Shown here: one piece after another, positions 3,254-53,320 of the stretch
Numbering within the stretch: position 1 is the first letter of the stretch
Layout: each line of letters opens with the position of its first letter
Position numbers and translations under genes: made by a program
The notes under the pieces: model-generated
What the model was told of the DNA's origin: nothing
Seen by the model: only the letters and a program-made list of their open reading frames with translations
Databases searched by the model: none
Assembly: GCA_004431415.1 (NCBI GenBank)
Contig: QPMI01000559.1
Span: 72,961 to 136,960, forward strand
Direction of reading: 5' to 3'
Source of the DNA: Cyanophora paradoxa CCMP329
Taxonomy: Eukaryota; Plantae; Glaucophyta
Length of the DNA: 64,000 bases

Positions 3254-4835
3254 CTAGACTCCATGGGACCGAAGAAAACGGCTGAGCTGTTCGTTCACTA
3301 GAAGAGTTATCTGCGTGAAAAACATTCAGGTGAGTTCTTTTCAACAGAAAACGAGGAGATGAAGCTAGCGCCTGCCTCCACCCTCTTCCATAAGACTGGG
3401 CCGCCCCCCCCTTCCCCCCGCCCCCCCCCGCCCCCCCCCCCCCCCCTTGCCCCCCGTCATACTCAACTCCCCGTCTCTCAACCCCACCTCCCCCCCCCCC
3501 CCCCCCCCCCCCCCAACAACATCAACAATCATCACCATCACATGTGGCGCAATTCGAACATAGTAGGTCCCGAACCCCTGTGCGCACAGGCCTTAGTAAT
3601 GCAAAGCAGTCTATAGCTTTTAAAGGACAAACACGACAAAGTACTTGGCACCTTGTAGAACGCTAGAGGGCCCTCGTTTACGAGCGTTTTGAATACACAG
3701 TCGACTGAGTTTTTGTAGGGAAGCAATCCATGTGCATCCGGTTTTTGTTTCTGCATGCGCGTCTGCCAACCAAAGTCAGGATGCTCCAGCTCGGATTTCG
3801 ATTTTGGAGGATGGGAGGATGGGAACCTTCACAAAATCGAAGGGAAGAGAGGCCGCTGACGCGAGAAAACCCGCGGCTGCGCTCGCTGGTAGCTCCGCTT
3901 CTTTTCTCGTCCATTCCAACCGATGTTGTAGCACATCCTTGACCCGTTCATTTGATGCTAACATTGCGGCATTGAGCGCCATTGCTCGGCAGACCGTGGG
4001 GGTGCACCCCTAAGAGAGGTAAGGGCAGGCGGACGTCGGAGATACGGCGTTTCGCGCCTTCCAAAGGGCGAAGAAGCCCTCCTCTTTGATGATGCGGCCA
4101 AGCGCGTTGCCGACACCCGTGTAATTGCGGCGCTGCTCCTTGGGAAGCGTGGAGTCTGACTAAAAGAGAGTAAGGAAAAGGAAGATCAACTGAAAGAGAG
4201 CAGACCTGCATGCGAATGAGGGCGAGGTCTGCGGGAGTGCCAAAAACCGAGGCGATGCCGCCGGCCGATAGACCGAGGGTTGCCAAAACGTATGTTGGTA
4301 TGTGCTGGGCTGGAAAGTATTCTTCTTGGACTTTGTCGCGAGCGCTGTTGAACAGCCCAAGGCGAGCGGTTGTGTACGTCGCCTGCCGGAGAAGGGCAGC
4401 GCCGAGGCCCCGGTAAAAAGAGAGCATGCCGTCCTCGCGAAGCACTGTGAGGACTGTGGCAACAGCCCCCGCTTTGGGGCCCTTTACGCCTTCGCCTGGG
4501 AGATTTTCACTCGACGTAAGATTTCGATTTCGATGTTTGCACTCAAAGTAAGAAGCCTTACCTGCGAGCTGAAGCCTGACCTTGACCAAATCGACCGGCT
4601 GGAAAGAGGTCAGCGACGAGCACACGAGCGACGAGCGCGCGAGGCCAGGCTGTCCACCTGTATTATGCATGTTGCGAACATGCCGCTTGAACCGCCTAAG
4701 ACCTGCGCGGTGAAGAGCAGGCCGCTCACGGACGGACGCCGAAGGCTGGGGCGGCTCGGCGCGTACATAGGGTCGTGCCGCCTTCCAGACAGCGAGGGCA
4801 TTTGGGTACGCCGACGCCTCGAACTCCCGTGTCAT
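3254..4835 (-). CDS. Mitochondrial 2-oxoglutarate/malate (di/tricarboxylate) carrier, SLC25 family, multi-exon
   Basis: Exons with carrier signatures QPVDLVKVRLQL, YRGLGAALLRQATYTTARLG, GTPADLALIRMQ, LPFDFVK, YKNSVDCVFKTLVNEGPLAFYK, GFGTYYVRIAPH; last exon ITLLVNEQLSRFLRSHGV*. Confidence 0.93.
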
Positions 4836-6445
4836 CGCGAGCTGTGGCGTCGAAGAAATTGGCACGGCGTCACTTCGGCGCGCGTCGCGTCGACGTCGAC
4901 GTCGCTGCTGACAGTGATGCGGATGCTGCCTATCTGGCCCTGCAGAAAGAGCAGACTAGTACTGTGGATGTGCACAGTGTAGCCGGGCCTTTTTTTCTGG
5001 CGCCACGCCTTTTGGCGAGTCCACGAAGCGCGGGTCCTGCGGGCGATTACGTTTAATTTCCTGCTATTACTTTAAGGTCATGAAGTTAGACGTCGCTTTT
5101 GTTAGACGTTTGCCCACCAGTGGGCCACCACACTGTGACAACGACGCCCACAAAGATTTCGATAGACGAACTTCGCGATCGGAATGACCGACGAGAATAT
5201 TTACTTTTTCGAGATTGCACTGCGGCAGACCGTCGGACCCAGCCTGGCAGACACCTGTTCATCCGATCAGTTCTGACCGCGGGTAGGAGGTGGCCATGGG
5301 CAGGGCCCGCGCCGTGGCTGCGGCGGCCGGGCCCGGGTCGAAACAAAAGTCCTGTGCGAATTCCCCATGTTTTGGCCCCTAACGGGAAAGCGCTGTACAA
5401 TCACGCCCATGTACGCATATATATATATATACCTTTTTCGTCAGGACCGATGAACATTGTGCCCATCGACTTCATCAAGCTCGGGCGTGCAGGGCCCATT
5501 CCTCCCCAGGGATGCGCTCGCCGCACTCCGGATCTCTGCCCCAGCTGCAGGGTGTCGCCTCAGGGCCTCTTGCAATTAATATTCCCGCACCCCGCCTCCC
5601 CGCTTGCTCGCCCCCACCCCACCATGGCACAGCAATTGCAACGCGTCGGACGAGCTAGCTCATTGTTCGCCACGAGCTGTACGAGTGGGCGCACCGTTGG
5701 GCGCTCGCGCACAGGGCGGGCACCCCCGCCTGCCCCCCCTCACCCCTGAATTTGCTGAAAGTTTTTTCGTAACGTAGTAAAAAATGAATATCACAATCTT
5801 TGTCGACGTCGAAGCAAAACAATGCGCCCCCGCCCCCCCCTCCTGCCCCCCAGGGGCAGTTTTTCCTGTCACAGTGTCCCCGAGGGGCAGCTGCAGTGCA
5901 GCCTCGGGTCGCAGGCTATATATAGCTAGGGGGGCGGGGTTAACGTTCTAGAAAAGTTTCGCCCTGGCACCCATTCAATGATTGGCCAATAGGGTCGTCG
6001 TTCTTGCGCATGCGCGAATCGGCGAATAGGAGCACAAAGCCCCAAAGAATCTACCCCCCCCCCCCGCCCCCCCCCCCCCCTCCCTATTTAAATCAAAAGG
6101 GTCCGGTCCTCAGGGCCTTTTTAAATTTCCTTAAGTATACCACTCTTTATATAATATAATTTATTATATTATATATACCCCGCCCCCTCGCCCCCTCGCC
6201 ACTCTGTACAAGTACTAGTAGCCCCCCTTGCACCTCCGCGGCCGCGCGCGGCCCGCACTTCCCGCACTTGCACACGGCCGGGCGCGGTCAGCTAGTTATA
6301 TGATAGTCCAGGAAAAGGTCCAATCCTTCGCGCAGCATTCCTATCTATCTATATATATCTTAAGCTTTGAATTCGAATTCAACCGTTGAACGCTCAGTTA
6401 ACACTTACACTCATGATCAGTAAAGAGCTGGAAGCTGGATCGGGA

Positions 6446-7003: not shown

Positions 7004-7249
7004 TCCATCAGGGCATCAGTCCCTGCGGGTTACGCTCTCACCCAAACAGCACGGGTACAGTTAAAGCGCTGTAGGTAGGAGGTCCCGCGCGCCCGTAGCT
7101 TAGAAAGAGCAATCCGTTGTGGCAAATTCTCCATCAGGGCACCAGTCCCTGCGGGTTACGCTCTCACCCAAACAGCACGGGTACAGTTAAAGCGCTGTAG
7201 GTAGGAGGTCCCGCGCGCCCGTAGCTTAGAAAGAGCAATCCGTTGTGGC
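7004..7249 (+). ncRNA. Two tandem copies of the Fanzor right end / putative omegaRNA scaffold (7004-7111 and 7130-7237), each followed by ATCCGTTGTGGC
   Basis: Near-identical to 53191-53298; 126-bp periodicity. Confidence 0.7.
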
Positions 7250-7998: not shown

Positions 7999-8066
7999 CG
8001 GGGTTCGTGCATTCGATCGCGAAACGTGACTATGATAACCTTCAATGAGTAGGCTACTGGAAAGGA

Positions 8067-12610
<4,544 letters not shown>

Positions 12611-15865: not shown

Positions 15866-16105
15866 TGCTCTTTCTACGCTACGGGCGCGCGGGACCACTC
15901 CTAGACCGTCAACGCTTTAACTATACCCGTGCTGTTCGGGGTGAGAGCGTAACCCGCAGGGACTGGTGCCCTGATGGAAAAAAGGGGATGGGAGCCGAGC
16001 CTAGCTACGTATACGAGCTGAGCAGGCGCTTCGCGTCCACGCCCGTGCCGTAGCGGATCAGGATGCCCCTGCGAGAGGTCTGTGCGATCAGTACGATTAC
16101 GATTG
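15866..16105 (-). mobile_element. Fanzor right end copy (variant subfamily, includes the last coding exon)
   Basis: Reverse complement of ~53065-53298, with the variant central segment shared with 43865-44104. Confidence 0.85.
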
Positions 16106-17774: not shown

Positions 17775-18792
17775 GCATTTGGACACGTACTGAAACGCAG
17801 GTCCGGGCTACAAGTGTGGGAATGTACACTGCGGCCGCCGCGGCCGCGGGCCCAGCCCACCGAGCCCACGCTCGGCCAGCCGGGCCCTGCGTGGCCCCCT
17901 AAGGAGAGTAATGCGCCTCCCCACGGACACTCTGGCTAGCTAGAGCTGGACGTCTTTGATTTCGGTTGCGATTGGGGGTTGGGCGATGGAGCTCAGGTTG
18001 GACGTCATTGATTTCGGATACGATTAGGGGTTGTTTTACAAATTAAATAGGGATTGGGTGACCGAGCGAAGGTTGGACGTCTTTGATTGCATGCGATTAC
18101 GATTAGGCCGGGTTGGGCGACGGAGCTAATTTTATAAGCTTTTAAGGTTAACGTTAACGTTGGATGTCTTTGATTTCGATAACGATAAGGGGTTGGGCGA
18201 CACAGCGCTAGCTATGGTACCGGTTGTACGTTGGAAGCCATCATAGTATATATATATATATTATTGCCTCACGGCTTTATGCCGTCAAGAGCCCGCACTC
18301 CGAGTCGCGTTACTCGCATGCGCAGTGCTTGGCCTTAGTCTACGCAGCGCTCGCATTGAGTGCGGCGATTGGACCCCCACTACTTTTCATGTACCCCTCT
18401 CGGGCTCACACCCCAGGTGACACACTTGTACCCTGCGACTGTGCTTGCTCCTAGAATACCAGTTCCGCTCGCTCTCGCTGCCAGCCTGCCGAAGCTGCAC
18501 AGCACGCATGGTCACGCCTAGCAGCACCGTAAACTAGGCTCTTCTGAATATATATAGCATATAGCGCCAGCTAGCGCTAGCTAGAGTGTCCGCGGGAAGG
18601 CGAATTAATCGAAATACTCTCCTTAGGGGGCCGGGGGGGGGGGGGGGGGGGGGCATGACCAGCTTGCTGGCCATGGTGGGCTGGGCGCCAGCCGGGCCAG
18701 CGGCTGCGGCGGCCGGAGTGTACATTCCCACACTTGCAATATTAATTGTTGCATGTCGCCCAGACTTGCGGTTTGAATTCGTGTCCAAATGC
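17775..18792. mobile_element. Inverted pair of left ends (17775-17940 plus; 18578-18792 minus) enclosing ~50-bp subterminal repeats
   Basis: GCA-TTTGGACAC termini at both outer edges; repeated GGACGTCTTTGATT...CGATT units at ~17945-18200. Confidence 0.7.
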
Positions 18793-20492: not shown

Positions 20493-20539
20493 CAGCACGT
20501 AGGTAGGAGGTCCGGCGCGCCCGTAGCTTAGAAAGAGCA
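20493..20539 (+). mobile_element. Minimal Fanzor right end copy
   Basis: GTAGGTAGGAGGTCCGGCGCGCCCGTAGCTTAGAAAGAGCA, identical to the element terminus. Confidence 0.8.
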
Positions 20540-22156: not shown

Positions 22157-22520
22157 TGGAGCCTGAGCAGAGTGCCCCTAGGCCTCTATTAATATTCGTC
22201 CCCTTCTTGCCCTCTGGCGCAGGCCGACTCCATGTCTGGTCGCCTCCTCGCTGCAGGCGTACCACGTTGCGAAGAGGACCGAGGCCTGCGCCCACAGCGC
22301 GCAGAAGTGCGTCAACAGGCATCGCCCCCCCCCCCCCCCCCCCCCCTCCCCCCCCCCCATTGCCGGGGCAGCTAGCAAGAGTGTCCGCGGGGAGGCGCAT
22401 TACTCTCCTTGGCCAGTTCTTTGTTCAAGAATAGAGCAATAGCGGCTCACCCAAACAGCACGGGTACAGCTAAAGCGCTGAGGTAGGAGGTCCGGCCGCG
22501 CCCGTAGCTTAGAAAGAGCA
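22157..22520 (+). mobile_element. Composite ~365-bp unit ending in a Fanzor right end; second copy inverted at 32301-32665
   Basis: Colinear similarity between the two copies, stopping exactly at GAAAGAGCA. Confidence 0.8.
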
Positions 22521-24812: not shown

Positions 24813-25179
24813 GCATTTGGACACTGTGACACGTACTAAAACGCAGGTCCGGGCTACAAGTGTGGGAATGTACACTGCGGCCGCCGCGGCCGCGGGCCCA
24901 GCCCACCAGCGAGCTGGCCGGCCGGGCCCTGCGTGGCCCCCTAAGGAGAGTAATGCGCCTCCCCACGGACACCGTGCTACGCTATGGCTAGCTATGGCTA
25001 CGTGTGCCCGCATGCGCGGCCGCGCCCGGGGGGCCACGCAAGGCCCGGCTGGCCAGCTAACTGCACCTGGGACGCCAGCGCTAGCGCGGCGCCACGCGGG
25101 TCCGGATCCGCGCCCCACTTGCCTGGCCAAATCCCACACTTGCAGCCCGGACTTGCGGTTTGAATTCGTGTCCAAATGC
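24813..25179. mobile_element. MITE-like unit formed by two inverted left ends
   Basis: GCATTTGGACAC at 24813 (plus) and at 25179 (minus); the two ends belong to different left-end subfamilies. Confidence 0.75.
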
Positions 25180-25200
25180 TTCTTCCGTAATATAAGCCCA

Positions 25201-31966: not shown

Positions 31967-32300
31967 ATAACTGCACAAGCTCTCCCCACCACCCTTTTCC
32001 CCCTTTCCCCTTCCTCTCCTCATCATCATACTCACTCCCTGTCTCTCAACCCCACCCCCCACCCCACTCCATCCCCACCACCCTCCCCCCCCCCCCCCCC
32101 CCCTCCCCCGCGCGCCACCCCTTTTTCCCCACCTACTCTCCCTTTGCCCTCTCCCTCGCTCTCGCCCTCTCCCCTCCTCCATTCCCCCTAAGTTGCTTCT
32201 CTTGCTCTGACTGCTCCTCCGGCCTGCTTGCTGAGCTGTAATACCTTCCATGTAAGCTTTTACTGAGGCACACTGATCATACTGCCATGGCCAGGCTGTG

Positions 32301-32665
32301 TGCTCTTTCTAAGCTACGGGCGCGGCCGGACCTCCTACCTCAGCGCTTTAACTGTACCCGTGCTGTTTGGGTGAGCCGCTATTGCTCTATTCTTGAACAA
32401 AGAACTGGCCAAGGAGAGTAATGCGCCTCCCCGCGGACACTCTTGCTAGCTGCCCCGGCGAGGGGGGGGGGGGGGGGGGGGGGGGCGATGCCTGTTGACG
32501 CACTTCTGCGCGCTGTGGGCGCACGCCTCGGTCCTCTTCGCAACGTGGTACGCCTGCAGCGAGGCGGCCAGACATGTACATGGAGTCAGCCTGCGCCATG
32601 CCAGAGGGCAAGCTTAAGGGGGGGACGAATAGAGACCTAGGCCTAGGGGCACTCTGCTCAGGCTC
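32301..32665 (-). mobile_element. Second copy of the composite right-end unit
   Basis: Reverse complement of 22157-22520. Confidence 0.8.
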
Positions 32666-39933: not shown

Positions 39934-40130
39934 TGCTCTTTCTAAGCTACGGGCGCGGCCGGACCTCCTACTTCAGCGCTTTAACTGTACCCGTGCTGTT
40001 TGGGTGAGAGCGTAACCCGCAGGCCCTGAGGGACTGGTGCCCTAGGCCTGATCATCGGATGGAAAAAAGGGAATCGGAGCCTAGCTAGCTACGAGCTGAG
40101 CAGGCGCTTCGCGTCCACGCCCGTGCCGTA
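39934..40130 (-). mobile_element. Fanzor right end copy with small insertions
   Basis: Intact terminus TGCTCTTTCTAAGCTACGGGCGCG on the plus strand. Confidence 0.85.
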
Positions 40131-40639
40131 TAGACACAGGCGCTTCGCGTATAGACACAGGCGCTTCGCGTATAGACACAACACGCACCGCGCGGCGCCG
40201 CCGTCGCATATGCATTTATGAACGGAACAGGGACACTGCAGTTGCACTGCCCCTGTACATGTTGGAGGGGAAGGACCTCTATCGGTTGATCATGAGCAGG
40301 AAAGGTCAGGTTAGCCAAGATAGAGATAGCTATAGTGCTGACTCTGTAGATCTATAGCTAGAGCCTGCGCACGCAGCCGCTGATAATGATCATGAGTTGC
40401 GCGAACGCCTGCAGTTGGGACGGTCGGCCGGGCTCGCGATCGACTCGGCGAGCTCGTGGGACCGGAAGAGGACTTGCAGGTCAATCAGTTAGGTTGATTA
40501 GTTCTGGGTCTTCGACTCGCCCCCGCCCCCTGCTCGTCACGGCGTCTCGCGATCGGGATGTGCAAGGTGGCCATGTGGCCTAATTCAACAAAGACAGCAT
40601 CTGCAGACTGCAGCTAATGCTCGGTAGGCGTAGACGTGC

Positions 40640-43419: not shown

Positions 43420-43449
43420 GGACCTGCGTTTTAGTACGTGTCCAAATGC
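43420..43449 (-). mobile_element. Left end terminus copy
   Basis: Reverse complement reads GCATTTGGACACGTACTAAAACGCAGGTCC. Confidence 0.75.
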
Positions 43450-43864
43450 GAAGAATTAGCTGCCTAATATCACGAAGGAATCATTTTTGAAAGCGCTCCC
43501 CTCCCCCCCCAGGCCCGCCCCCCCCTGGCTTGAATTGGGTTCAACGGTTGCAACGCAAGTGCATGAAGGCATCCATGGGCGTTCGTCCATGCCCCCCTGA
43601 CTCCAGCTTTAAATTAGGCATGCGCCCCGCCCAGCCCACCGATCTTGCACACGGCCAGCTAGTCTTGTAGCCTAGCTAGCGCTATATATTGTAGGCCCTG
43701 TACTACGGTATAAGTAATTGTCTATCGTAATCGTAATTTACCTCCGGCCCGGCTCACCGCCTACCCGCCTACTAGGGCTAGCCCCCTGATAGTAATCGTA
43801 ATTTTCCAGTTGACCAGGCCAGGGCTCCCCTCGCCTATAGCCCATCGTAATCGTAATGGGCGCG

Positions 43865-44104
43865 GCAATCGCAATCGTAATCGTACTGATCGCACAGACC
43901 TCTTGCAGGGGCATCCTGATCCGCTACGGCACGGGCGTGGACGCGAAGCGCCTGCTCAGCTCGTAGCTAGGCTCGGCTCCCATCCCCTTTTCCATCAGGG
44001 CACCAGTCCCTGCGGGTTACGCTCTCACCCCGAACAGCACGGGTATAGTTAAAGCGTTGACGGTCTAGTGAGTGGTCCGGCGCGCCCGTAGCTTAGAAAG
44101 AGCA
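43865..44104 (+). mobile_element. Fanzor right end copy including the last exon (variant subfamily)
   Basis: Matches ~53069-53298; encodes GILIRYGTGVDAKRLLSS*. Confidence 0.88.
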
Positions 44105-47199: not shown

Positions 47200-50100
47200 C
47201 ACAGCTCGCGAAAAAAAGTCGGTCCCCACAACTCGGTTTGTATGACAGGGGGGGGAGCAAGTCGACTTGGAAAATCCCTACGCCGGTCAATTAAATCTTT
47301 TCATATATATGGCATATATATGCATTCTTATAGAGCTTATTTCTTTCTATCAGTAGTTTTAACGAGATCGAGGAGAGATTCCGGTCGGCGGTCGCTGGCA
47401 GATCTAGAGAGAAGTTCAACAAACAGCACGCCTCTTGACAGTGTTGACACCAGCGCCCACATCAGCATTGCGTAGGCCCGAGGATCGAAGACAGCCAGGC
47501 AGTATAGTTTGGATGCGTCCGGGCGTACTGTGGCCTAGCGCGCCTTCGTTCTGCCGCAGCAGCGGCCGACGCACGACGCCCGCGCGCAGCGAGCACGACG
47601 CACTCATGATCCGCTACGGCTCGTGGTGCGCTCGTTGCCCCCGTTGCCCGGGCCCGTTGCCCCTGTCGCTGACAAACACGCAGGCTGACACTCCCGTAGT
47701 AGCCACTGCATGTACCTGTAGTAGCTACTGTACCTGTAGTAGCCACCATGCGGCTCTGCGGTCCGCGCGTCCGAGCCGGGGCCGACCGTCGGCCGCGGAC
47801 GCGTGGCGGCGTGTCTCGGTGCTCGAGCAGGGCGCGACAGACGCGGGCGACGACGGGGCGACGCGGGCGACGCGGGGCGGCGGGGCGGGCCCCGGCGGGC
47901 GGCGGAGGCCAGGCCGACGCGCGGCGGGTCTCGGTGCGCGAGCAGGGGCCGCGGGCGGCGCCGAGGGGCTGCCGACGACGGGGCGCAGGCCTGCGGCTTC
48001 GGGGGCGGCGGGGCGGGCCCTGGCGGGCGGCGTAGGCCAGGCCGACGCGCGGCGGCGGGTCTCGGTGCGCGAGCAGGGGCCGCGGGCGGCGCCGAGGGGC
48101 TGCCGACGACGGGGCGCAGGCCTGCGGCTTCGGGGGCGGCGGGGCGGGCCCCGGCGGGCGGCGTAGGCCAGGCCGACGCGCGGCGGCGGGTCTCGGTGCG
48201 CGAGCAGGGGCCGCGGGCGGCGCCGGGGCGCTGCGGACGACGGGGCGTAGGCCTGCGGCTTCGGGGGCGGCGGGGCGGGCCCTGGCGGGCGGCGTAGGCC
48301 AGGCCGACGCGCGGCGGCGGGTCTCGGTGCGCGAGCAGGGGCCGCGGGCGGCGCCGAGGGGCTGCCGACGACGGGGCGCAGGCCTGCGGCTTCGGGGGCG
48401 GCGGGGCGGGCCCTGGCGGGCGGCGTAGGCCAGGCCGACGCGCGGCGGCGGGTCTCGGTGCGCGAGCAGGGGCCGCGGGCGGCGCCGGGGCGCATTCTTC
48501 TCAGGGCCTCTCCGTCCCGCCTGCTCTCCTGCTCTCCGTCCCTCTCCGAAACCCGCCGGCGCCCCGCCTGCGCCGTCTGGGTCGGCGAGCGCTTTGTTAA
48601 GCATGTACGAAGCTGTAAATGCATCTAGATGATGTATATCTCGCGTCCCAGGCGCTAGATGCGACCGGGCGGGCGAGAATCGTCCTGGGGCCAGATGGGG
48701 CCGCAGATTGCAGCGGATCTTGAATGCAGGTCCAGGCTTTAATCGGCGGTCTTCGGTACCACCACCACCGTCTTCAGCACCCTCGAAAACCCCCGGGGGC
48801 GTGAAATCGCCACTACTGAGTGAGTCGATGCTTCCGAAGTTCAATAAGGCATCATGAGCAGGTCAGGGTGGCATCTTGAAACTTGAAAACTGAAAAGTTC
48901 CAGAGAGAGTCCTACGCCGTGACGAGTGAAGTTCAAAACATCGGTCCGGCCCAAAAACACTTCGGATCACCCTGGATCTTGGTGTGGTGACATTTATACA
49001 TGTGATAATGATTCTGGCTTGAAGAGCGGCCAGCTGAGGCCAGCCAGTCGCCCAGGAACTCACTAGCTCACTGACTGTGAGCAGGCGATCTCCGCTGAGG
49101 ATGCACCGACGGGGGCCGCGATGCATCAGCACACGCTCTATCAAGGCTCGCATCGATTTGCGTTAGCGGTGGCCAAGCGAACCCCCGCGGCCGGGAGCGA
49201 AATTAGATCGCAAAGGCCCCCCCCCCTCATGATCATGATCAAGCCTTCTGGAGGAGAAGGCGATTCCCGGTTCCCGCTGCAGATGCACGCGCCGGAGCCG
49301 CGCTCCACCCGCACATGCTCTTTCGAGATGTGCATCGATCTGCGTTAACGGTGGTCCAGCGACTCGGCGAACCCTCGCGGTCTAGAGCGAAATTAGATCG
49401 CGCAGGTGCCCCCACCCCAAGCCTTCTGAAGGAGCAGGCGATCTTCGCTGTGGATGCACCCCCGGGGACCGCGCTTCAACTGCACATGCTCTTTTGAGGT
49501 GTGCATCGATCTGCGTTAGCGGCGGCCCGGCGGCCCTCGCAGTAAGCAGCGAAATCAAATCTCCCAGGTGCCACCCGGCCCACCCACTGGACTCAGTGGA
49601 GCAGGTGCCTCTGGCCATGGCGGCGGGGGTGCGTGCCGCCGCCCGTACGCGAGCTCTGCGCGTGCTCTAGATGTGCCTCATGGCCCTAGACGTCTCAACC
49701 CGCATCGCCCCGCCGTTGCAGCCATGCCATCTGGAACCGCGGCCGCCTGCGTCTGCACACGAGGCCCGGGGCCGGGGCCGGGGCCTGCGGCGGCGAGGAC
49801 GCGGCGGAGGAGGCGGAAGAGGGCGGCGCGGCGGAGGGGGCGGGGCGCGACGGGCCGGCCCAGGGGGCCCGGGGCCGGGGCGGCGGAGCGGGGCCCGCTG
49901 GAGCCGAGGAGGACGGCCGGCGGGGCCGCCGGGAGCGCCGCCAGGTCCCCCGCCTGGCCCTGCGCCGCCGCGGGCTCGAGGGGGGGTATACCCCGAGCAC
50001 GGGCGGGTACGACAAACAGCGGTTCGCGCCCGAAGGATCCGACACAGCCAGCCGGCACCGTCGCCGTGAGGCTGGCATGCCGCTTAAGCTTGATTGCACA

Positions 50101-51999: not shown

Positions 52000-53298
52000 G
52001 CATTTGGACACGTACTGAAACGCAGGTCCGGGCTACAAGTGTGGGAATGAGCCGTAACGCACATGAGCCGTCTATGTAGTAATCACAGATCAAAGCTAAG
52101 ACGTCCTAATTATGATCGTAATCGCAGATCAAGGACGCCCTAATCGTAATCGCAGATCAAAGCTAAGACGTCGACGTCCTTATTATGATCGTAATTGCAG
52201 ATCAAAGCTAAGACGTCGACGTCTTCGCAACACCAGCATGTCGCTGGCCAACAGAATTCGCAACACCAGCTGGAATGCCATGCACAAGTTGGCCAAGGTA
52301 TGCGTAAGCTATCATTGGGTTGTTATCGTGTGGGGGAATCGACCTTGGTAGCTGCTTCTTCGAAACAAGCCGTTGAAAGATGCCGCGCAACAATGTACTC
52401 AACCCCACCAGGAACTTGCACAAGGGCTTCCAGGAGGGCAGCTTCTTCCTTCCGAGAAGTTCCTGTGCCAAGGAAGGAGCAATGCCATGGCAGGGGTTTG
52501 AGCAGAAAAACATTTAAGCAGGTCTTCCAACGTGTTGGCATCATCACTTGCTCGTCTCACAGCTGAAAACGCTGCTGGAACCTGTAAATCTCGAAGTGAG
52601 AAGGCTTCAGGTATTCTTGAAGGGAAAAAAACGGACCGTGGGTGGCGCGTCAGGCTCTCGACTGCCGCCACTACGAGTACGCTGGTCTTGCGTTTCGACC
52701 CCCTCTGCCACACGGTCTTGATGCTTATTTTGCGCAGGTTCCGGCAGCTCCTGCAGCACGCCGTCCGGCGGCACCCCAAGGACGAGGACCCGCCGTGCAC
52801 GCTCCAGCTCGTCTGCGAGGCCTGGACCTCGAAGACGTGCGGGGTGTGCGGCAAGATCAACTACGGGCTCGGCTCGAAGAGGGTCTTCGAGTGCCGCCCC
52901 GGGTGCGGCTTCCGGGCGGACCGCGACGGCAGCGCCGCGCGGTGCGTGTTGTGTCTATACACGCCTATACACAATCGCTGCCCCCCCCCCCGCCTAGTCC
53001 CGACACGGCCTAGCCACGGCGTAATTTTCCGTCTAGGGCCGGCTCGCCCTCCCAGCGCCGCCCGATTCGCAATCGTAATCGTACTGATCGCACAGACCTC
53101 TCGCAGGGGCATCCTGATCCGCTACGGCACGGGCGTGGACGCGAAGCGCCTGCTCAGCTCGTAGCTAGGCTCGGCTCCCATCCCCTTTTTTCCATCAGGG
53201 CACCAGTCCCTGCGGGTTACGCTCTCACCCAAACAGCACGGGTACAGTTAAAGCGCTGTAGGTAGGAGGTCCGGCGCGCCCGTAGCTTAGAAAGAGCA
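52000..53298 (+). mobile_element. Internally deleted Fanzor2/IS607-like element with left end, subterminal repeats, nuclease remnant and right end
   Basis: GCA-TTTGGACACGTACTGAAACGC at 52000; GATCGTAATCGCAGATCAA repeats at ~52080-52215; RuvC/zinc-finger exons; terminus AGAAAGAGCA at 53298. Confidence 0.8.
52211..53164 (+). pseudogene. Fanzor (eukaryotic TnpB homologue) C-terminal remnant with spliceosomal introns
   Basis: RRRRLRNTSMSLANRIRNTSWNAMHKLAK; spliced (introns 52677-52737 and 52942-53106) VARQALDCRHYEFRQLL...VCEAWTSKTCGVCG...LGSKRVFECRPGCGFRADRDGSAARGILIRY...*; RuvC-I and the N-terminus are absent. Confidence 0.9.
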
Positions 53299-53320
53299 CA
53301 CATAGAGTTCTTACCGCTTA
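53165..53320 (+). ncRNA. Putative omegaRNA scaffold plus guide
   Basis: Conserved multi-copy segment between the Fanzor stop codon and the element end; stems CAGGG/CCCTG, GGGT/ACCC, ACGGG/CCCGT, TACAG/CTGTA; loop GCTCT complementary to terminal AGAGC. Confidence 0.7.

What the first reader, a model, noticed from the sequence alone, without database searches (positions are those of the whole stretch)
52000..53320. Intron-containing Fanzor2-like RNA-guided nuclease element with both ends resolvable
Seen: removing two GT-AG introns (52677-52737 and 52942-53106) gives HYEFRQLL...VCEAWTSKTCGVCG...FECRPGCGFRADRDGSAARGILIRY. Upstream lies an R/K-rich helix (RRLRNTSMSLANRIRN...HKLAK), and multi-copy end sequences bracket the whole. 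Established: EAxTSKTCxxCG...CxxCG...DRDxNAARNI is the RuvC-II / zinc finger / RuvC-III signature of TnpB and Fanzor, and Fanzor2 derives from IS607 TnpB. Inference: this is a eukaryotised, spliced Fanzor2 family. This copy lacks RuvC-I and the N-terminus and looks chimeric near 52630, so it is inactive, but intact copies may exist elsewhere. The DRDGS variant (S in place of the usual N) is unusual.
Basis: partly seen in the sequence, partly recalled or inferred. Interest (0 to 1): 0.9.

Follow-up and report, generated by a model that had tools for sequence, protein, structure and literature searches.

The report
Truncated Fanzor2-like transposon tail, Cyanophora
This is the broken-off last tenth of a gene for an RNA-guided DNA-cutting enzyme (Fanzor), lying 3 kb from a chromosome end of the alga Cyanophora paradoxa; it is ordinary transposon debris that cannot make a working enzyme.

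Summary
Exon 52738-52941 hits the Pfam TnpB/Cas12f zinc-ribbon domain (E 2e-9). It is 93% identical to Cyanophora paradoxa gene models that carry exactly the two predicted splice joins.

Only the last ~100 codons of the family's 1087-aa full-length-like model are present (52636-53161). The RuvC-I motif and everything N-terminal are missing, and there is no ATG, so the copy is dead.

Its 3' end at 53298 is a true element end. Ten other tails in the window stop at the same base and have variable 5' truncation.

The supposed left end (52000-52049) is the terminus of an unrelated inverted-repeat element family, so "both ends resolvable" fails.

The upstream R/K-rich "helix" is partly tandem-repeat DNA. 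It matches the Fanzor profile only marginally (E 0.02).

The nearest solved structure is mimivirus L79 (a Fanzor2), which supports the label "Fanzor2-like". No IS607 recombinase was found among the window's long ORFs.

The DRDGS variant is not special.

This scan has already found and followed up the same truncated-tail family on other DNA of this genome. Interest is low.

The parts
52000..52049 (+). Solo terminus fragment of an unrelated inverted-repeat (MITE-like) transposon family. It is not part of the Fanzor element.
   Evidence: It is 100% identical to the left terminus of the 1018-bp element 17775-18792, which has about 175-bp inverted terminal repeats. The other copies continue with a different body after position 52049.
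52076..52230 (+). Local tandem triplication of a 36-67 bp unit.
   Evidence: the repeat finder families D6 and D7; self-BLAST 52079-52132 against 52146-52205.
52202..52348 (+). Possible older, very diverged Fanzor remnant: the helix that precedes RuvC-II (IRN......HKLAK..Y..VVI).
   Evidence: A profile of 68 full-length relatives gives E 0.02, second best of 2204 six-frame pieces. It matches at profile positions 317-367, just before the positions matched by the main exon. There is no tblastn match to the Cyanophora family and no protein relatives of 46-145 aa. The evidence is weak.
52636..52676 (+). First retained coding piece (PWVARQALDCRHY + 2 bases). Homology to the family starts here, so this is the 5' truncation point.
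   Evidence: tblastn of P0157 aa 988-1002 and P0001 aa 22-36, 93% identity. An in-frame stop lies at 52618-52620.
52677..52737 (+). Intron 1, 61 nt, GT..AG.
   Evidence: Read directly from the sequence. The join restores the conserved H-Y-x-F-R-Q motif of the family profile and is present in gene models P0001, P0154 and P0157.
52738..52941 (+). Main exon: alternative RuvC-II glutamate (VCEAWTSKTC), zinc ribbon CxxC...CxxxC, RuvC-III DRD.
   Evidence: Pfam PF07282 E 2e-9. phmmer E 2.4e-38 to a C. paradoxa model. Profile hit E 2.8e-30.
52942..53106 (+). Intron 2, 165 nt, GT..AG. It falls inside the RuvC-III helix.
   Evidence: Read directly from the sequence. The join AAR|G-I-x-I-R-Y is present in P0154. 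The 3' part of the intron is retained in three other tails, so the copies were made from DNA or unspliced template, not from spliced mRNA.
53107..53164 (+). Last exon (GILIRYGTGVDAKRLLSS) and TAG stop.
   Evidence: tblastn of P0154 aa 217-235, 89% identity. The same exon is seen in four other tails.
53165..53298 (+). 3' non-coding tail ending at the element's right end (...TTAGAAAGAGCA). This is the presumed guide-RNA scaffold region.
   Evidence: Ten other copies in the window end at the same base, and the sequence diverges immediately after it. The RNA role is inferred only: fold z-score +0.99 and no compensatory changes.
53299..53318 (+). Flank that would serve as the guide if the tail were transcribed as a TnpB/Fanzor-type RNA.
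   Evidence: Inference from the known TnpB/Fanzor architecture. The flank differs at every copy.

Best explanation
A dead, 5'-truncated copy (52636-53298, 663 bp) of a multi-copy, intron-bearing Fanzor2-like transposon family of Cyanophora paradoxa. It sits in TE-rich subtelomeric DNA, 3.3 kb from a TTAGGG telomere array.

It keeps the last ~100 codons (alternative RuvC-II glutamate, zinc ribbon, RuvC-III aspartate), two introns, the stop codon and the 134-bp 3' tail up to the element's fixed right end. It lacks RuvC-I, the WED/REC parts and any ATG start codon, so it cannot make a nuclease.

Shown:
- homology to the family;
- the truncation point;
- the shared right end;
- the species.

Inferred:
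- The family spreads by a copy process that starts at the right end and often aborts, leaving tails of 41-663 bp.
- The 3' tail encodes the guide-RNA scaffold.

The Fanzor-like helix remnant 290 bp upstream is either an older, decayed copy or chance.
For: - Pfam TNB domain E 2e-9.
- 93% identity to C. paradoxa EukProt gene models that carry the same splice joins.
- tblastn of the 1087-aa model P0157 finds only aa 988-1087 in the window.
- P0157 has a DPG RuvC-I motif and the WED-like part at aa 483-675.
- 11 tails share the end at 53298 and differ in 5' truncation at 85-98% identity.
- Intron sequence is retained in other tails.
- An in-frame stop lies just upstream and there is no ATG.
- The telomere array starts at 56560.
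- Closest solved structure is mimivirus L79, E 8e-37.
- The 30 nearest full-length relatives have invariant DPG and Ealt. 17 carry HTH_OrfB_IS605 and 23 carry OrfB_IS605.
- 5' truncation with intact 3' ends is described for the Chlamydomonas Fanzor elements CRe-1 to CRe-3 (PMC3627910).
Against: - There is no RNA evidence for the introns at this locus.
- The copying mechanism is not shown: no target-site duplications, no transposase among ORFs of 250 aa or more in the window, and no Helitron-type end recognised.
- The collinear Fanzor-like remnant upstream (E 0.02) is an odd coincidence for a random truncated insertion. It might mean a longer chimeric or gene-converted copy.
Confidence: 0.85

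Rival explanations
1. One longer, old Fanzor copy runs from about 52200 to 53298. Its 3' part was overwritten by gene conversion from a young copy, or a young tail inserted into an older Fanzor remnant. The locus would then be a chimera of two Fanzor lineages rather than a simple truncated tail.
For: - The piece 52202-52348 matches the family profile at positions 317-367, directly before the positions covered by the tail, on the same strand.
- Pairwise phmmer aligns it to the equivalent region of many relatives, best P0021 at E 6.5e-4 in a set of 164 proteins.
- Identity drops abruptly from 93% to none at 52636.
Against: - E 0.02 is marginal, and part of the score comes from arginine-rich repeat DNA.
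- No part of 52349-52635 matches the profile, even in a local search.
- There are no relatives among proteins of 46-145 aa.
Confidence: 0.2
2. A complete non-autonomous element bounded by 52000 and 53298: a left end, an internally deleted Fanzor gene and a right end.
For: Both 52000-52049 and 53063-53298 are multi-copy in the window.
Against: - The left 50 bp is the outer terminus of a different family with its own inverted partner end (17775-17796 against 18771-18792). That family's body does not continue here.
- Nowhere in the window do the two repeats pair in this order and orientation.
- The ten other tails are truncated at different points and lack this left sequence.
Confidence: 0.05
3. 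A small expressed gene for a RuvC-lobe-only protein or a guide-RNA donor. The tail would be transcribed and would supply a guide RNA (or a mini-protein) to full-length Fanzor made elsewhere.
For: - Public gene models of 75-121 aa exist for similar tails in this species.
- An earlier follow-up in this scan reported transcription and correct splicing at another tail. I did not check this.
- The three retained coding pieces have no internal stops.
Against: - There is no ATG, and an in-frame stop lies three bases before the proposed AG acceptor (52621-52622) of the first retained coding piece.
- Without RuvC-I there is no catalytic triad.
- The tail does not fold better than shuffled sequence, and no covariation is seen.
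- No RNA data were obtained here.
Confidence: 0.07

Closest known systems
Fanzor2 of Acanthamoeba polyphaga mimivirus (TnpB-like protein L79, PDB 9b0l; ISvMimi elements)
   Same: - It is the best solved relative of the family: E 6e-06 for P0157, 2.5e-26 for relative P0013 and 8e-37 for the family profile.
- It has the same glutamate six residues before the first CxxC, a zinc ribbon and a DRD motif.
   Different: - L79 is a compact, intron-less 520-aa viral protein in an IS607-type element.
- The Cyanophora family is nuclear and has introns. Its full-length model is 1087 aa, with an N-terminal extension and a ~250-aa insertion.
- This copy holds only the last ~100 codons.
Chlamydomonas reinhardtii Fanzor1 elements CRe-1, CRe-2 and CRe-3 in Helitron2 transposons (Bao and Jurka 2013, PMC3627910)
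   Same: An algal nuclear genome, an intron-bearing Fanzor, and frequent 5' truncation with nearly all copies intact at the 3' end.
   Different: - Those are Fanzor1, carried by Helitron2 with hairpins, asymmetric terminal repeats and 7-19 bp target duplications.
- Here the protein is nearer to Fanzor2. No target duplications were seen, and no Helitron features or Rep/helicase were found.
Bacterial IS607/IS605 TnpB and cyanobacterial 'pro-Fanzors' (Yoon et al. 2023, PMC10711439)
   Same: The same RuvC/zinc-ribbon core. Pro-Fanzors and Fanzors share DPG in RuvC-I and the alternative RuvC-II glutamate. Solved bacterial TnpBs hit the family profile at about E 1e-14 to 1e-19.
   Different: Those are prokaryotic, intron-less and paired with a TnpA transposase. 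This copy is a spliced nuclear fragment with no transposase found among the window's long ORFs.

Membership tests
Fanzor (TnpB-family, as defined by Yoon et al. 2023) | Alternative RuvC-II glutamate six residues upstream of the first CxxC of the zinc finger | tested here: met
   VCEAWTSKTCGVCG at 52738-52941, read directly. It is aligned to the invariant E of the relatives. The definition comes from PMC10711439.
Fanzor (TnpB-family, as defined by Yoon et al. 2023) | RuvC-I aspartate in a DPG motif | tested here: not met
   It is absent from this copy: only aa 988-1087 of P0157 are encoded in the window. It is present in the family's full-length model P0157 (VIDPGV). The family qualifies; this copy is a fragment.
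Fanzor (TnpB-family, as defined by Yoon et al. 2023) | C4 zinc ribbon followed by RuvC-III RD/DRD (Pfam PF07282) | tested here: met
   PF07282 at E 2e-9, above the gathering score. The second cysteine pair is CxxxC rather than CxxC. DRD is present.
Fanzor (TnpB-family, as defined by Yoon et al. 2023) | Eukaryotic nuclear location | tested here: met
   - The same contig window carries a TTAGGG telomere array.
- A Mito_carr ORF lies in the window.
- The gene has GT-AG introns.
- The nearest proteins are C. paradoxa nuclear gene models.
Fanzor (TnpB-family, as defined by Yoon et al. 2023) | Structured guide RNA encoded at the 3' end of the element | tested here: inconclusive
   A conserved 134-bp tail with a fixed end is present. 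Its fold is no better than shuffles (z +0.99), and 0 of 36 predicted pairs show compensatory change. There is no Rfam match.
Fanzor2 / IS607-type element | Protein groups with Fanzor2 and IS607 TnpB rather than with Fanzor1 | tested here: met
   The top solved structure is mimivirus L79. No chain named Fanzor, and none I could identify as a Fanzor1, appears among the 49 hits at E up to 1. No tree with labelled Fanzor1 and Fanzor2 references was built, so support is by best hit only.
Fanzor2 / IS607-type element | TnpB-like N-terminal helix-turn-helix and compact size | tested here: inconclusive
   17 of the 30 nearest full-length relatives carry HTH_OrfB_IS605. P0157 shows no such domain and is 1087 aa. 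This copy has no N-terminus.
Fanzor2 / IS607-type element | Linked IS607-type serine recombinase (TnpA) | tested here: not met
   None of the nine longest ORFs of the window hits a recombinase or any transposase. The test is limited: it covers only the nine longest of the 13 ORFs of 250 aa or more, and it would miss intron-split genes.
Fanzor2 / IS607-type element | No terminal inverted repeats and no target-site duplications | tested here: met
   No shared flanking duplication was found at 8 of 10 tails. The two exceptions are tandem tail pairs. The right end is not the inverse of the 52000 sequence.
Helitron2-carried Fanzor (one-ended transposition) | 5' truncation with over-abundant intact 3' ends | tested here: met
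   11 tails of 41-663 bp all end at the same base.
Helitron2-carried Fanzor (one-ended transposition) | Terminal hairpins, asymmetric terminal inverted repeats, 7-19 bp target duplications, Rep/helicase partner | tested here: not met
   No target duplications. No stable terminal structure. No Rep/helicase among the long ORFs. The full-length element was not available to inspect.

The most novel reading that the evidence does not exclude
The Cyanophora family could be a still-active, intron-bearing, enlarged Fanzor2 that spreads by a right-end-first copy process. New truncated tails may land preferentially inside the guide-matching flank of existing tails. Two tandem pairs in this window start 7-20 nt after a previous tail's end (7004-7237, and 22446 with its duplicate at 32375). 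If so, the nuclease's own RNA-guided cut would be seeding insertions. The collinear older remnant upstream of this copy would be another trace of such self-proximal insertion.
Probability: 0.07. Interest if true: 0.6.

Novelty: new member of a known kind. Interest (0 to 1): 0.18.

Why it matters
This copy matters little by itself: it is a pseudogene fragment. Four features are already described for Fanzors:
- intron gain;
- multi-copy families;
- 5'-truncated copies;
- a repositioned glutamate.

Three modest points remain:
- A glaucophyte has a young, multi-copy Fanzor2-like family whose full-length model keeps all three catalytic residues. I found no paper that mentions Fanzor together with Cyanophora. 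The intact gene elsewhere in the genome could be a candidate eukaryote-adapted nuclease.
- The abundance of tails with a fixed right end gives material for working out how Fanzor2-type elements copy themselves in a eukaryote.
- The correction of the 'left end' prevents a wrong element boundary from being propagated.

Tried and rejected
- **Joined spliced peptide.** The exons were searched separately by reference.
- **Genomic locus of the full-length model.** P0157 is not on record in the contig collection, so I could not locate the DNA-level start of homology or the true left end of the element.
- **Relatives of the upstream 83-aa piece.** The protein search gave no hit at 46-145 aa.
- **An eyeballed reading.** I read 52349-52450 by eye as a frameshifted 'FETS..M' RuvC-II stretch. 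A local profile search did not support it, so I dropped it.
- **Guide-RNA structure.** The single-sequence fold is no better than shuffles, there is no covariation among 8 copies, and there is no Rfam family beyond two sub-threshold miRNA chance hits upstream.
- **Target-site duplications.** None found.
- **Neighbouring ORFs and long ORFs.** Pfam on six neighbouring ORFs and nine long ORFs gave only a mitochondrial carrier at 3951-4865.
- **Neighbourhood of a close relative.** P0013 lies on a giant-virus-like contig rich in ankyrin and F-box genes, with no recombinase next to it.
- **Earlier findings.** Word searches for an IS607 recombinase or telomere notes in this genome were blank.

Full report
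**What is in the sequence**

- Removing 52677-52737 (61 nt) and 52942-53106 (165 nt), both GT..AG, joins three coding pieces: 52636-52676, 52738-52941 and 53107-53161. The stop codon is at 53162-53164.
- I checked the exons one by one by reference.
- The middle exon (67 codons) hits Pfam PF07282 (Cas12f1-like TNB, the TnpB zinc ribbon) at E 2e-9, 37.9 bits against a curated cut-off of 26.3.
- In an exhaustive search of 1.84 billion representative proteins, its best match is E 2.4e-38 at 93% identity. 727 proteins match at E up to 0.001.

**Organism and family**

- The four best hits, and all nine members of the top cluster, are EukProt gene models of Cyanophora paradoxa. This confirms a lead from earlier notes of this scan.
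- These models are predictions, so they support the introns but do not prove them.
- Homology supports intron 1 independently. Only the spliced reading restores the H-Y-x-F-R-Q motif conserved in a profile of 68 full-length relatives.
- The window is nuclear and eukaryotic. A (TTAGGG)n array runs from 56560 to the window end, so the finding lies about 3.3 kb inside a chromosome end.
- A mitochondrial-carrier ORF lies at 3951-4865.

**How much of the gene is here**

- P0157 (1087 aa) is a full-length-like model.
  - Its aa 483-675 match the WED/RuvC-I part of the profile, including V-I-D-P-G-V.
  - Its aa 928-1078 match the RuvC-II/zinc-ribbon/RuvC-III part.
  - About 250 aa of low-complexity insertion lies between the two.
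- tblastn of P0157, P0154 and P0001 against the whole window finds only aa 988-1087 of P0157, at 52636-53161.
- Upstream of 52636 the frame has a stop at 52618-52620 and no ATG.
- The copy therefore lacks RuvC-I and everything N-terminal and cannot encode a nuclease.

**The ends**

- Self-comparison shows ten more copies of the 3' part in this window: 16112-15866, 43869-44104, 2307-2103, 19080-18926, 40130-39934, 7127-7237, 7004-7111, 32375-32297, 22446-22520 and 20499-20539. They are 85-98% identical (100% for the shortest, 41-bp copy).
- In the alignment, nine of the ten stop at the same base (...TTAGAAAGAGCA, 53298 here; the copy at 2307-2103 loses similarity a few bases earlier) and diverge immediately afterwards. 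Their 5' ends differ, giving lengths of 41-247 bp.
- This copy, at 663 bp, is the longest. So 53298 is a genuine element end.
- Three tails retain the 3' part of intron 2. They were therefore copied from DNA or unspliced template, not from spliced mRNA.
- The 'left end' is a different matter. 52000-52049 is 100% identical to the outer terminus of a short inverted-repeat element family.
  - Examples are 17775-18792 (arms 17775-17796 and 18771-18792) and copies at 24828, 28068, 8744, 9473 and 11256.
  - In those copies the terminus continues into a body that is absent here.
  - The two repeats do not pair elsewhere in the window in this order and orientation.
- 'Both ends resolvable' is therefore not supported.
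- The 48-nt repeats just downstream (53307, 53610, 54453) and the 300-bp duplicate (53353-53652 against 54196-54495) are local subtelomeric duplications.

**The upstream 'helix'**

- The rest (LANRIRNTSWNAMHKLAK, reading on into ..Y..VVI) matches the profile at positions 317-367. That is immediately before the positions matched by the main exon, but only at E 0.02. It is the second best of 2204 six-frame pieces.
- Pairwise phmmer places it at the equivalent site of many relatives.
- It does not resemble the Cyanophora family's own sequence at that position.
- Nothing in 52349-52635 matches the profile.
- No protein of 46-145 aa resembles it.
- I treat it as a possible older Fanzor remnant (about 20%), not as part of this copy.

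**Which kind of Fanzor**

- Yoon et al. 2023 (PMC10711439) define Fanzors by DPG in RuvC-I and a glutamate six residues before the first CxxC.
- This copy has that glutamate (VCEAWTSKTCGVCG).
- DPG is present only in the full-length model.
- The best solved structure is mimivirus 'TnpB-like protein L79' (9b0l). Its E-values are 6e-06 for P0157, 2.5e-26 for relative P0013 and 8e-37 for a profile of 18 family C-terminal halves.
- Bacterial TnpBs follow at about 1e-14 to 1e-19. No chain named Fanzor, and none I could identify as a Fanzor1, appears among the hits at E up to 1.
- ISvMimi elements are Fanzor2 in Bao and Jurka 2013.
- All 30 nearest full-length relatives have invariant DPG and the alternative glutamate. 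17 carry HTH_OrfB_IS605 and 23 carry OrfB_IS605. One of them lies on a giant-virus-like contig.
- 'Fanzor2-like' is thus supported by best hit and by architecture of relatives. No labelled tree was built.
- The IS607 link is not shown: the nine longest ORFs of the window give no recombinase.
- The DRDGS variant is unremarkable. The family has DRDGG, and relative P0009 has DRDLS.

**How it most likely arose and works**

- Shown: a fixed right end and variable 5' truncation.
- Inferred: the family copies itself from the right end and often aborts.
- Bao and Jurka proposed this for the 5'-truncated, 3'-intact Fanzor elements CRe-1 to CRe-3 of Chlamydomonas.
- I found no target-site duplications, no Helitron-like terminal structure and no partner enzyme, so the mechanism stays open.
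- By analogy with TnpB and Fanzor, the 134-bp tail should encode the guide-RNA scaffold and the flank would be the guide. Here the tail folds no better than shuffled sequence (z +0.99). 0 of 36 predicted pairs show compensatory change. Rfam has nothing.

**What could not be done**

- The full-length locus could not be fetched.

**Comparison with what is known, and verdict**

- Intron gain, multi-copy families and the repositioned glutamate are documented for Fanzors (PMC10530073; PMC10711439).
- One-sided truncation is documented too (PMC3627910).
- No paper in the library mentions Fanzor together with Cyanophora. The three that mention Fanzor and glaucophytes say nothing relevant.
- Earlier follow-ups in this scan reached the same reading for other tails of this family on other DNA of this genome. 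My tests agree independently.
- This is a new but ordinary member of a known kind.

Noticed in passing
window 56560-64000: A (TTAGGG)n telomere array of about 7.4 kb, G-rich strand running to the window end, with occasional variant units (for example near 56620). The window is a chromosome end. No telomere letters were sent to any search tool.
   Followed up: partly
window 17775-18792; related termini at 24828, 28068, 25132-25182(-), 43420-43452(-), 8066, 8744, 9473, 11256, 11968: A MITE-like element family of about 1 kb with ~175-bp terminal inverted repeats. Copies at 8066-12112 recur every ~700 bp and are preceded by long G and C homopolymer runs.
   Followed up: partly
window 7004-7237; 22446-22520 and its duplicate 32297-32375: Tandem pairs of Fanzor tails. 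A truncated tail begins 7-20 nt after the end of a previous tail, and the first 4-12 nt of flank are repeated after the second tail. This could be a local duplication, or insertion into the guide-matching flank.
   Followed up: partly
window 39934-40207 (-): An internally deleted tail. A 41-bp piece matching 52923-52963 is joined to the last ~175 bp, with short tandem repeats of a fused intron/exon motif at the junction.
   Followed up: no
window 15866-16030(-) and 43947-44104(+): Two tails form a sub-variant with a 5-6-nt insertion and several linked substitutions near the 3' end of the tail. This gives two scaffold subfamilies, as another first-reader note said. No compensatory pairs were seen.
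   Followed up: partly
window 53307-53354, 53610-53657, 54453-54500; 53353-53652 against 54196-54495: A perfect 48-nt repeat in three copies and a 99%-identical 300-bp duplicate 843 bp apart, directly downstream of the tail. These are subtelomeric duplications of unknown origin with no Pfam hits.
   Followed up: partly
window 48000-48493: A tandem repeat of 131 bp, three or more copies at 97-100% identity, inside a very GC-rich (70%) stretch at 48-50 kb.
   Followed up: no
window 3951-4865 (-): An ORF with a mitochondrial carrier (Mito_carr) domain, E 1e-15. It is probably an exon of an ordinary host gene.
   Followed up: no
L001 6001-7365: The close relative P0013 has the HTH_OrfB_IS605, OrfB_IS605 and TNB domains. 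It sits alone among ankyrin and F-box genes on a 52-kb metagenomic contig that looks like a giant virus, with no recombinase beside it.
   Followed up: no
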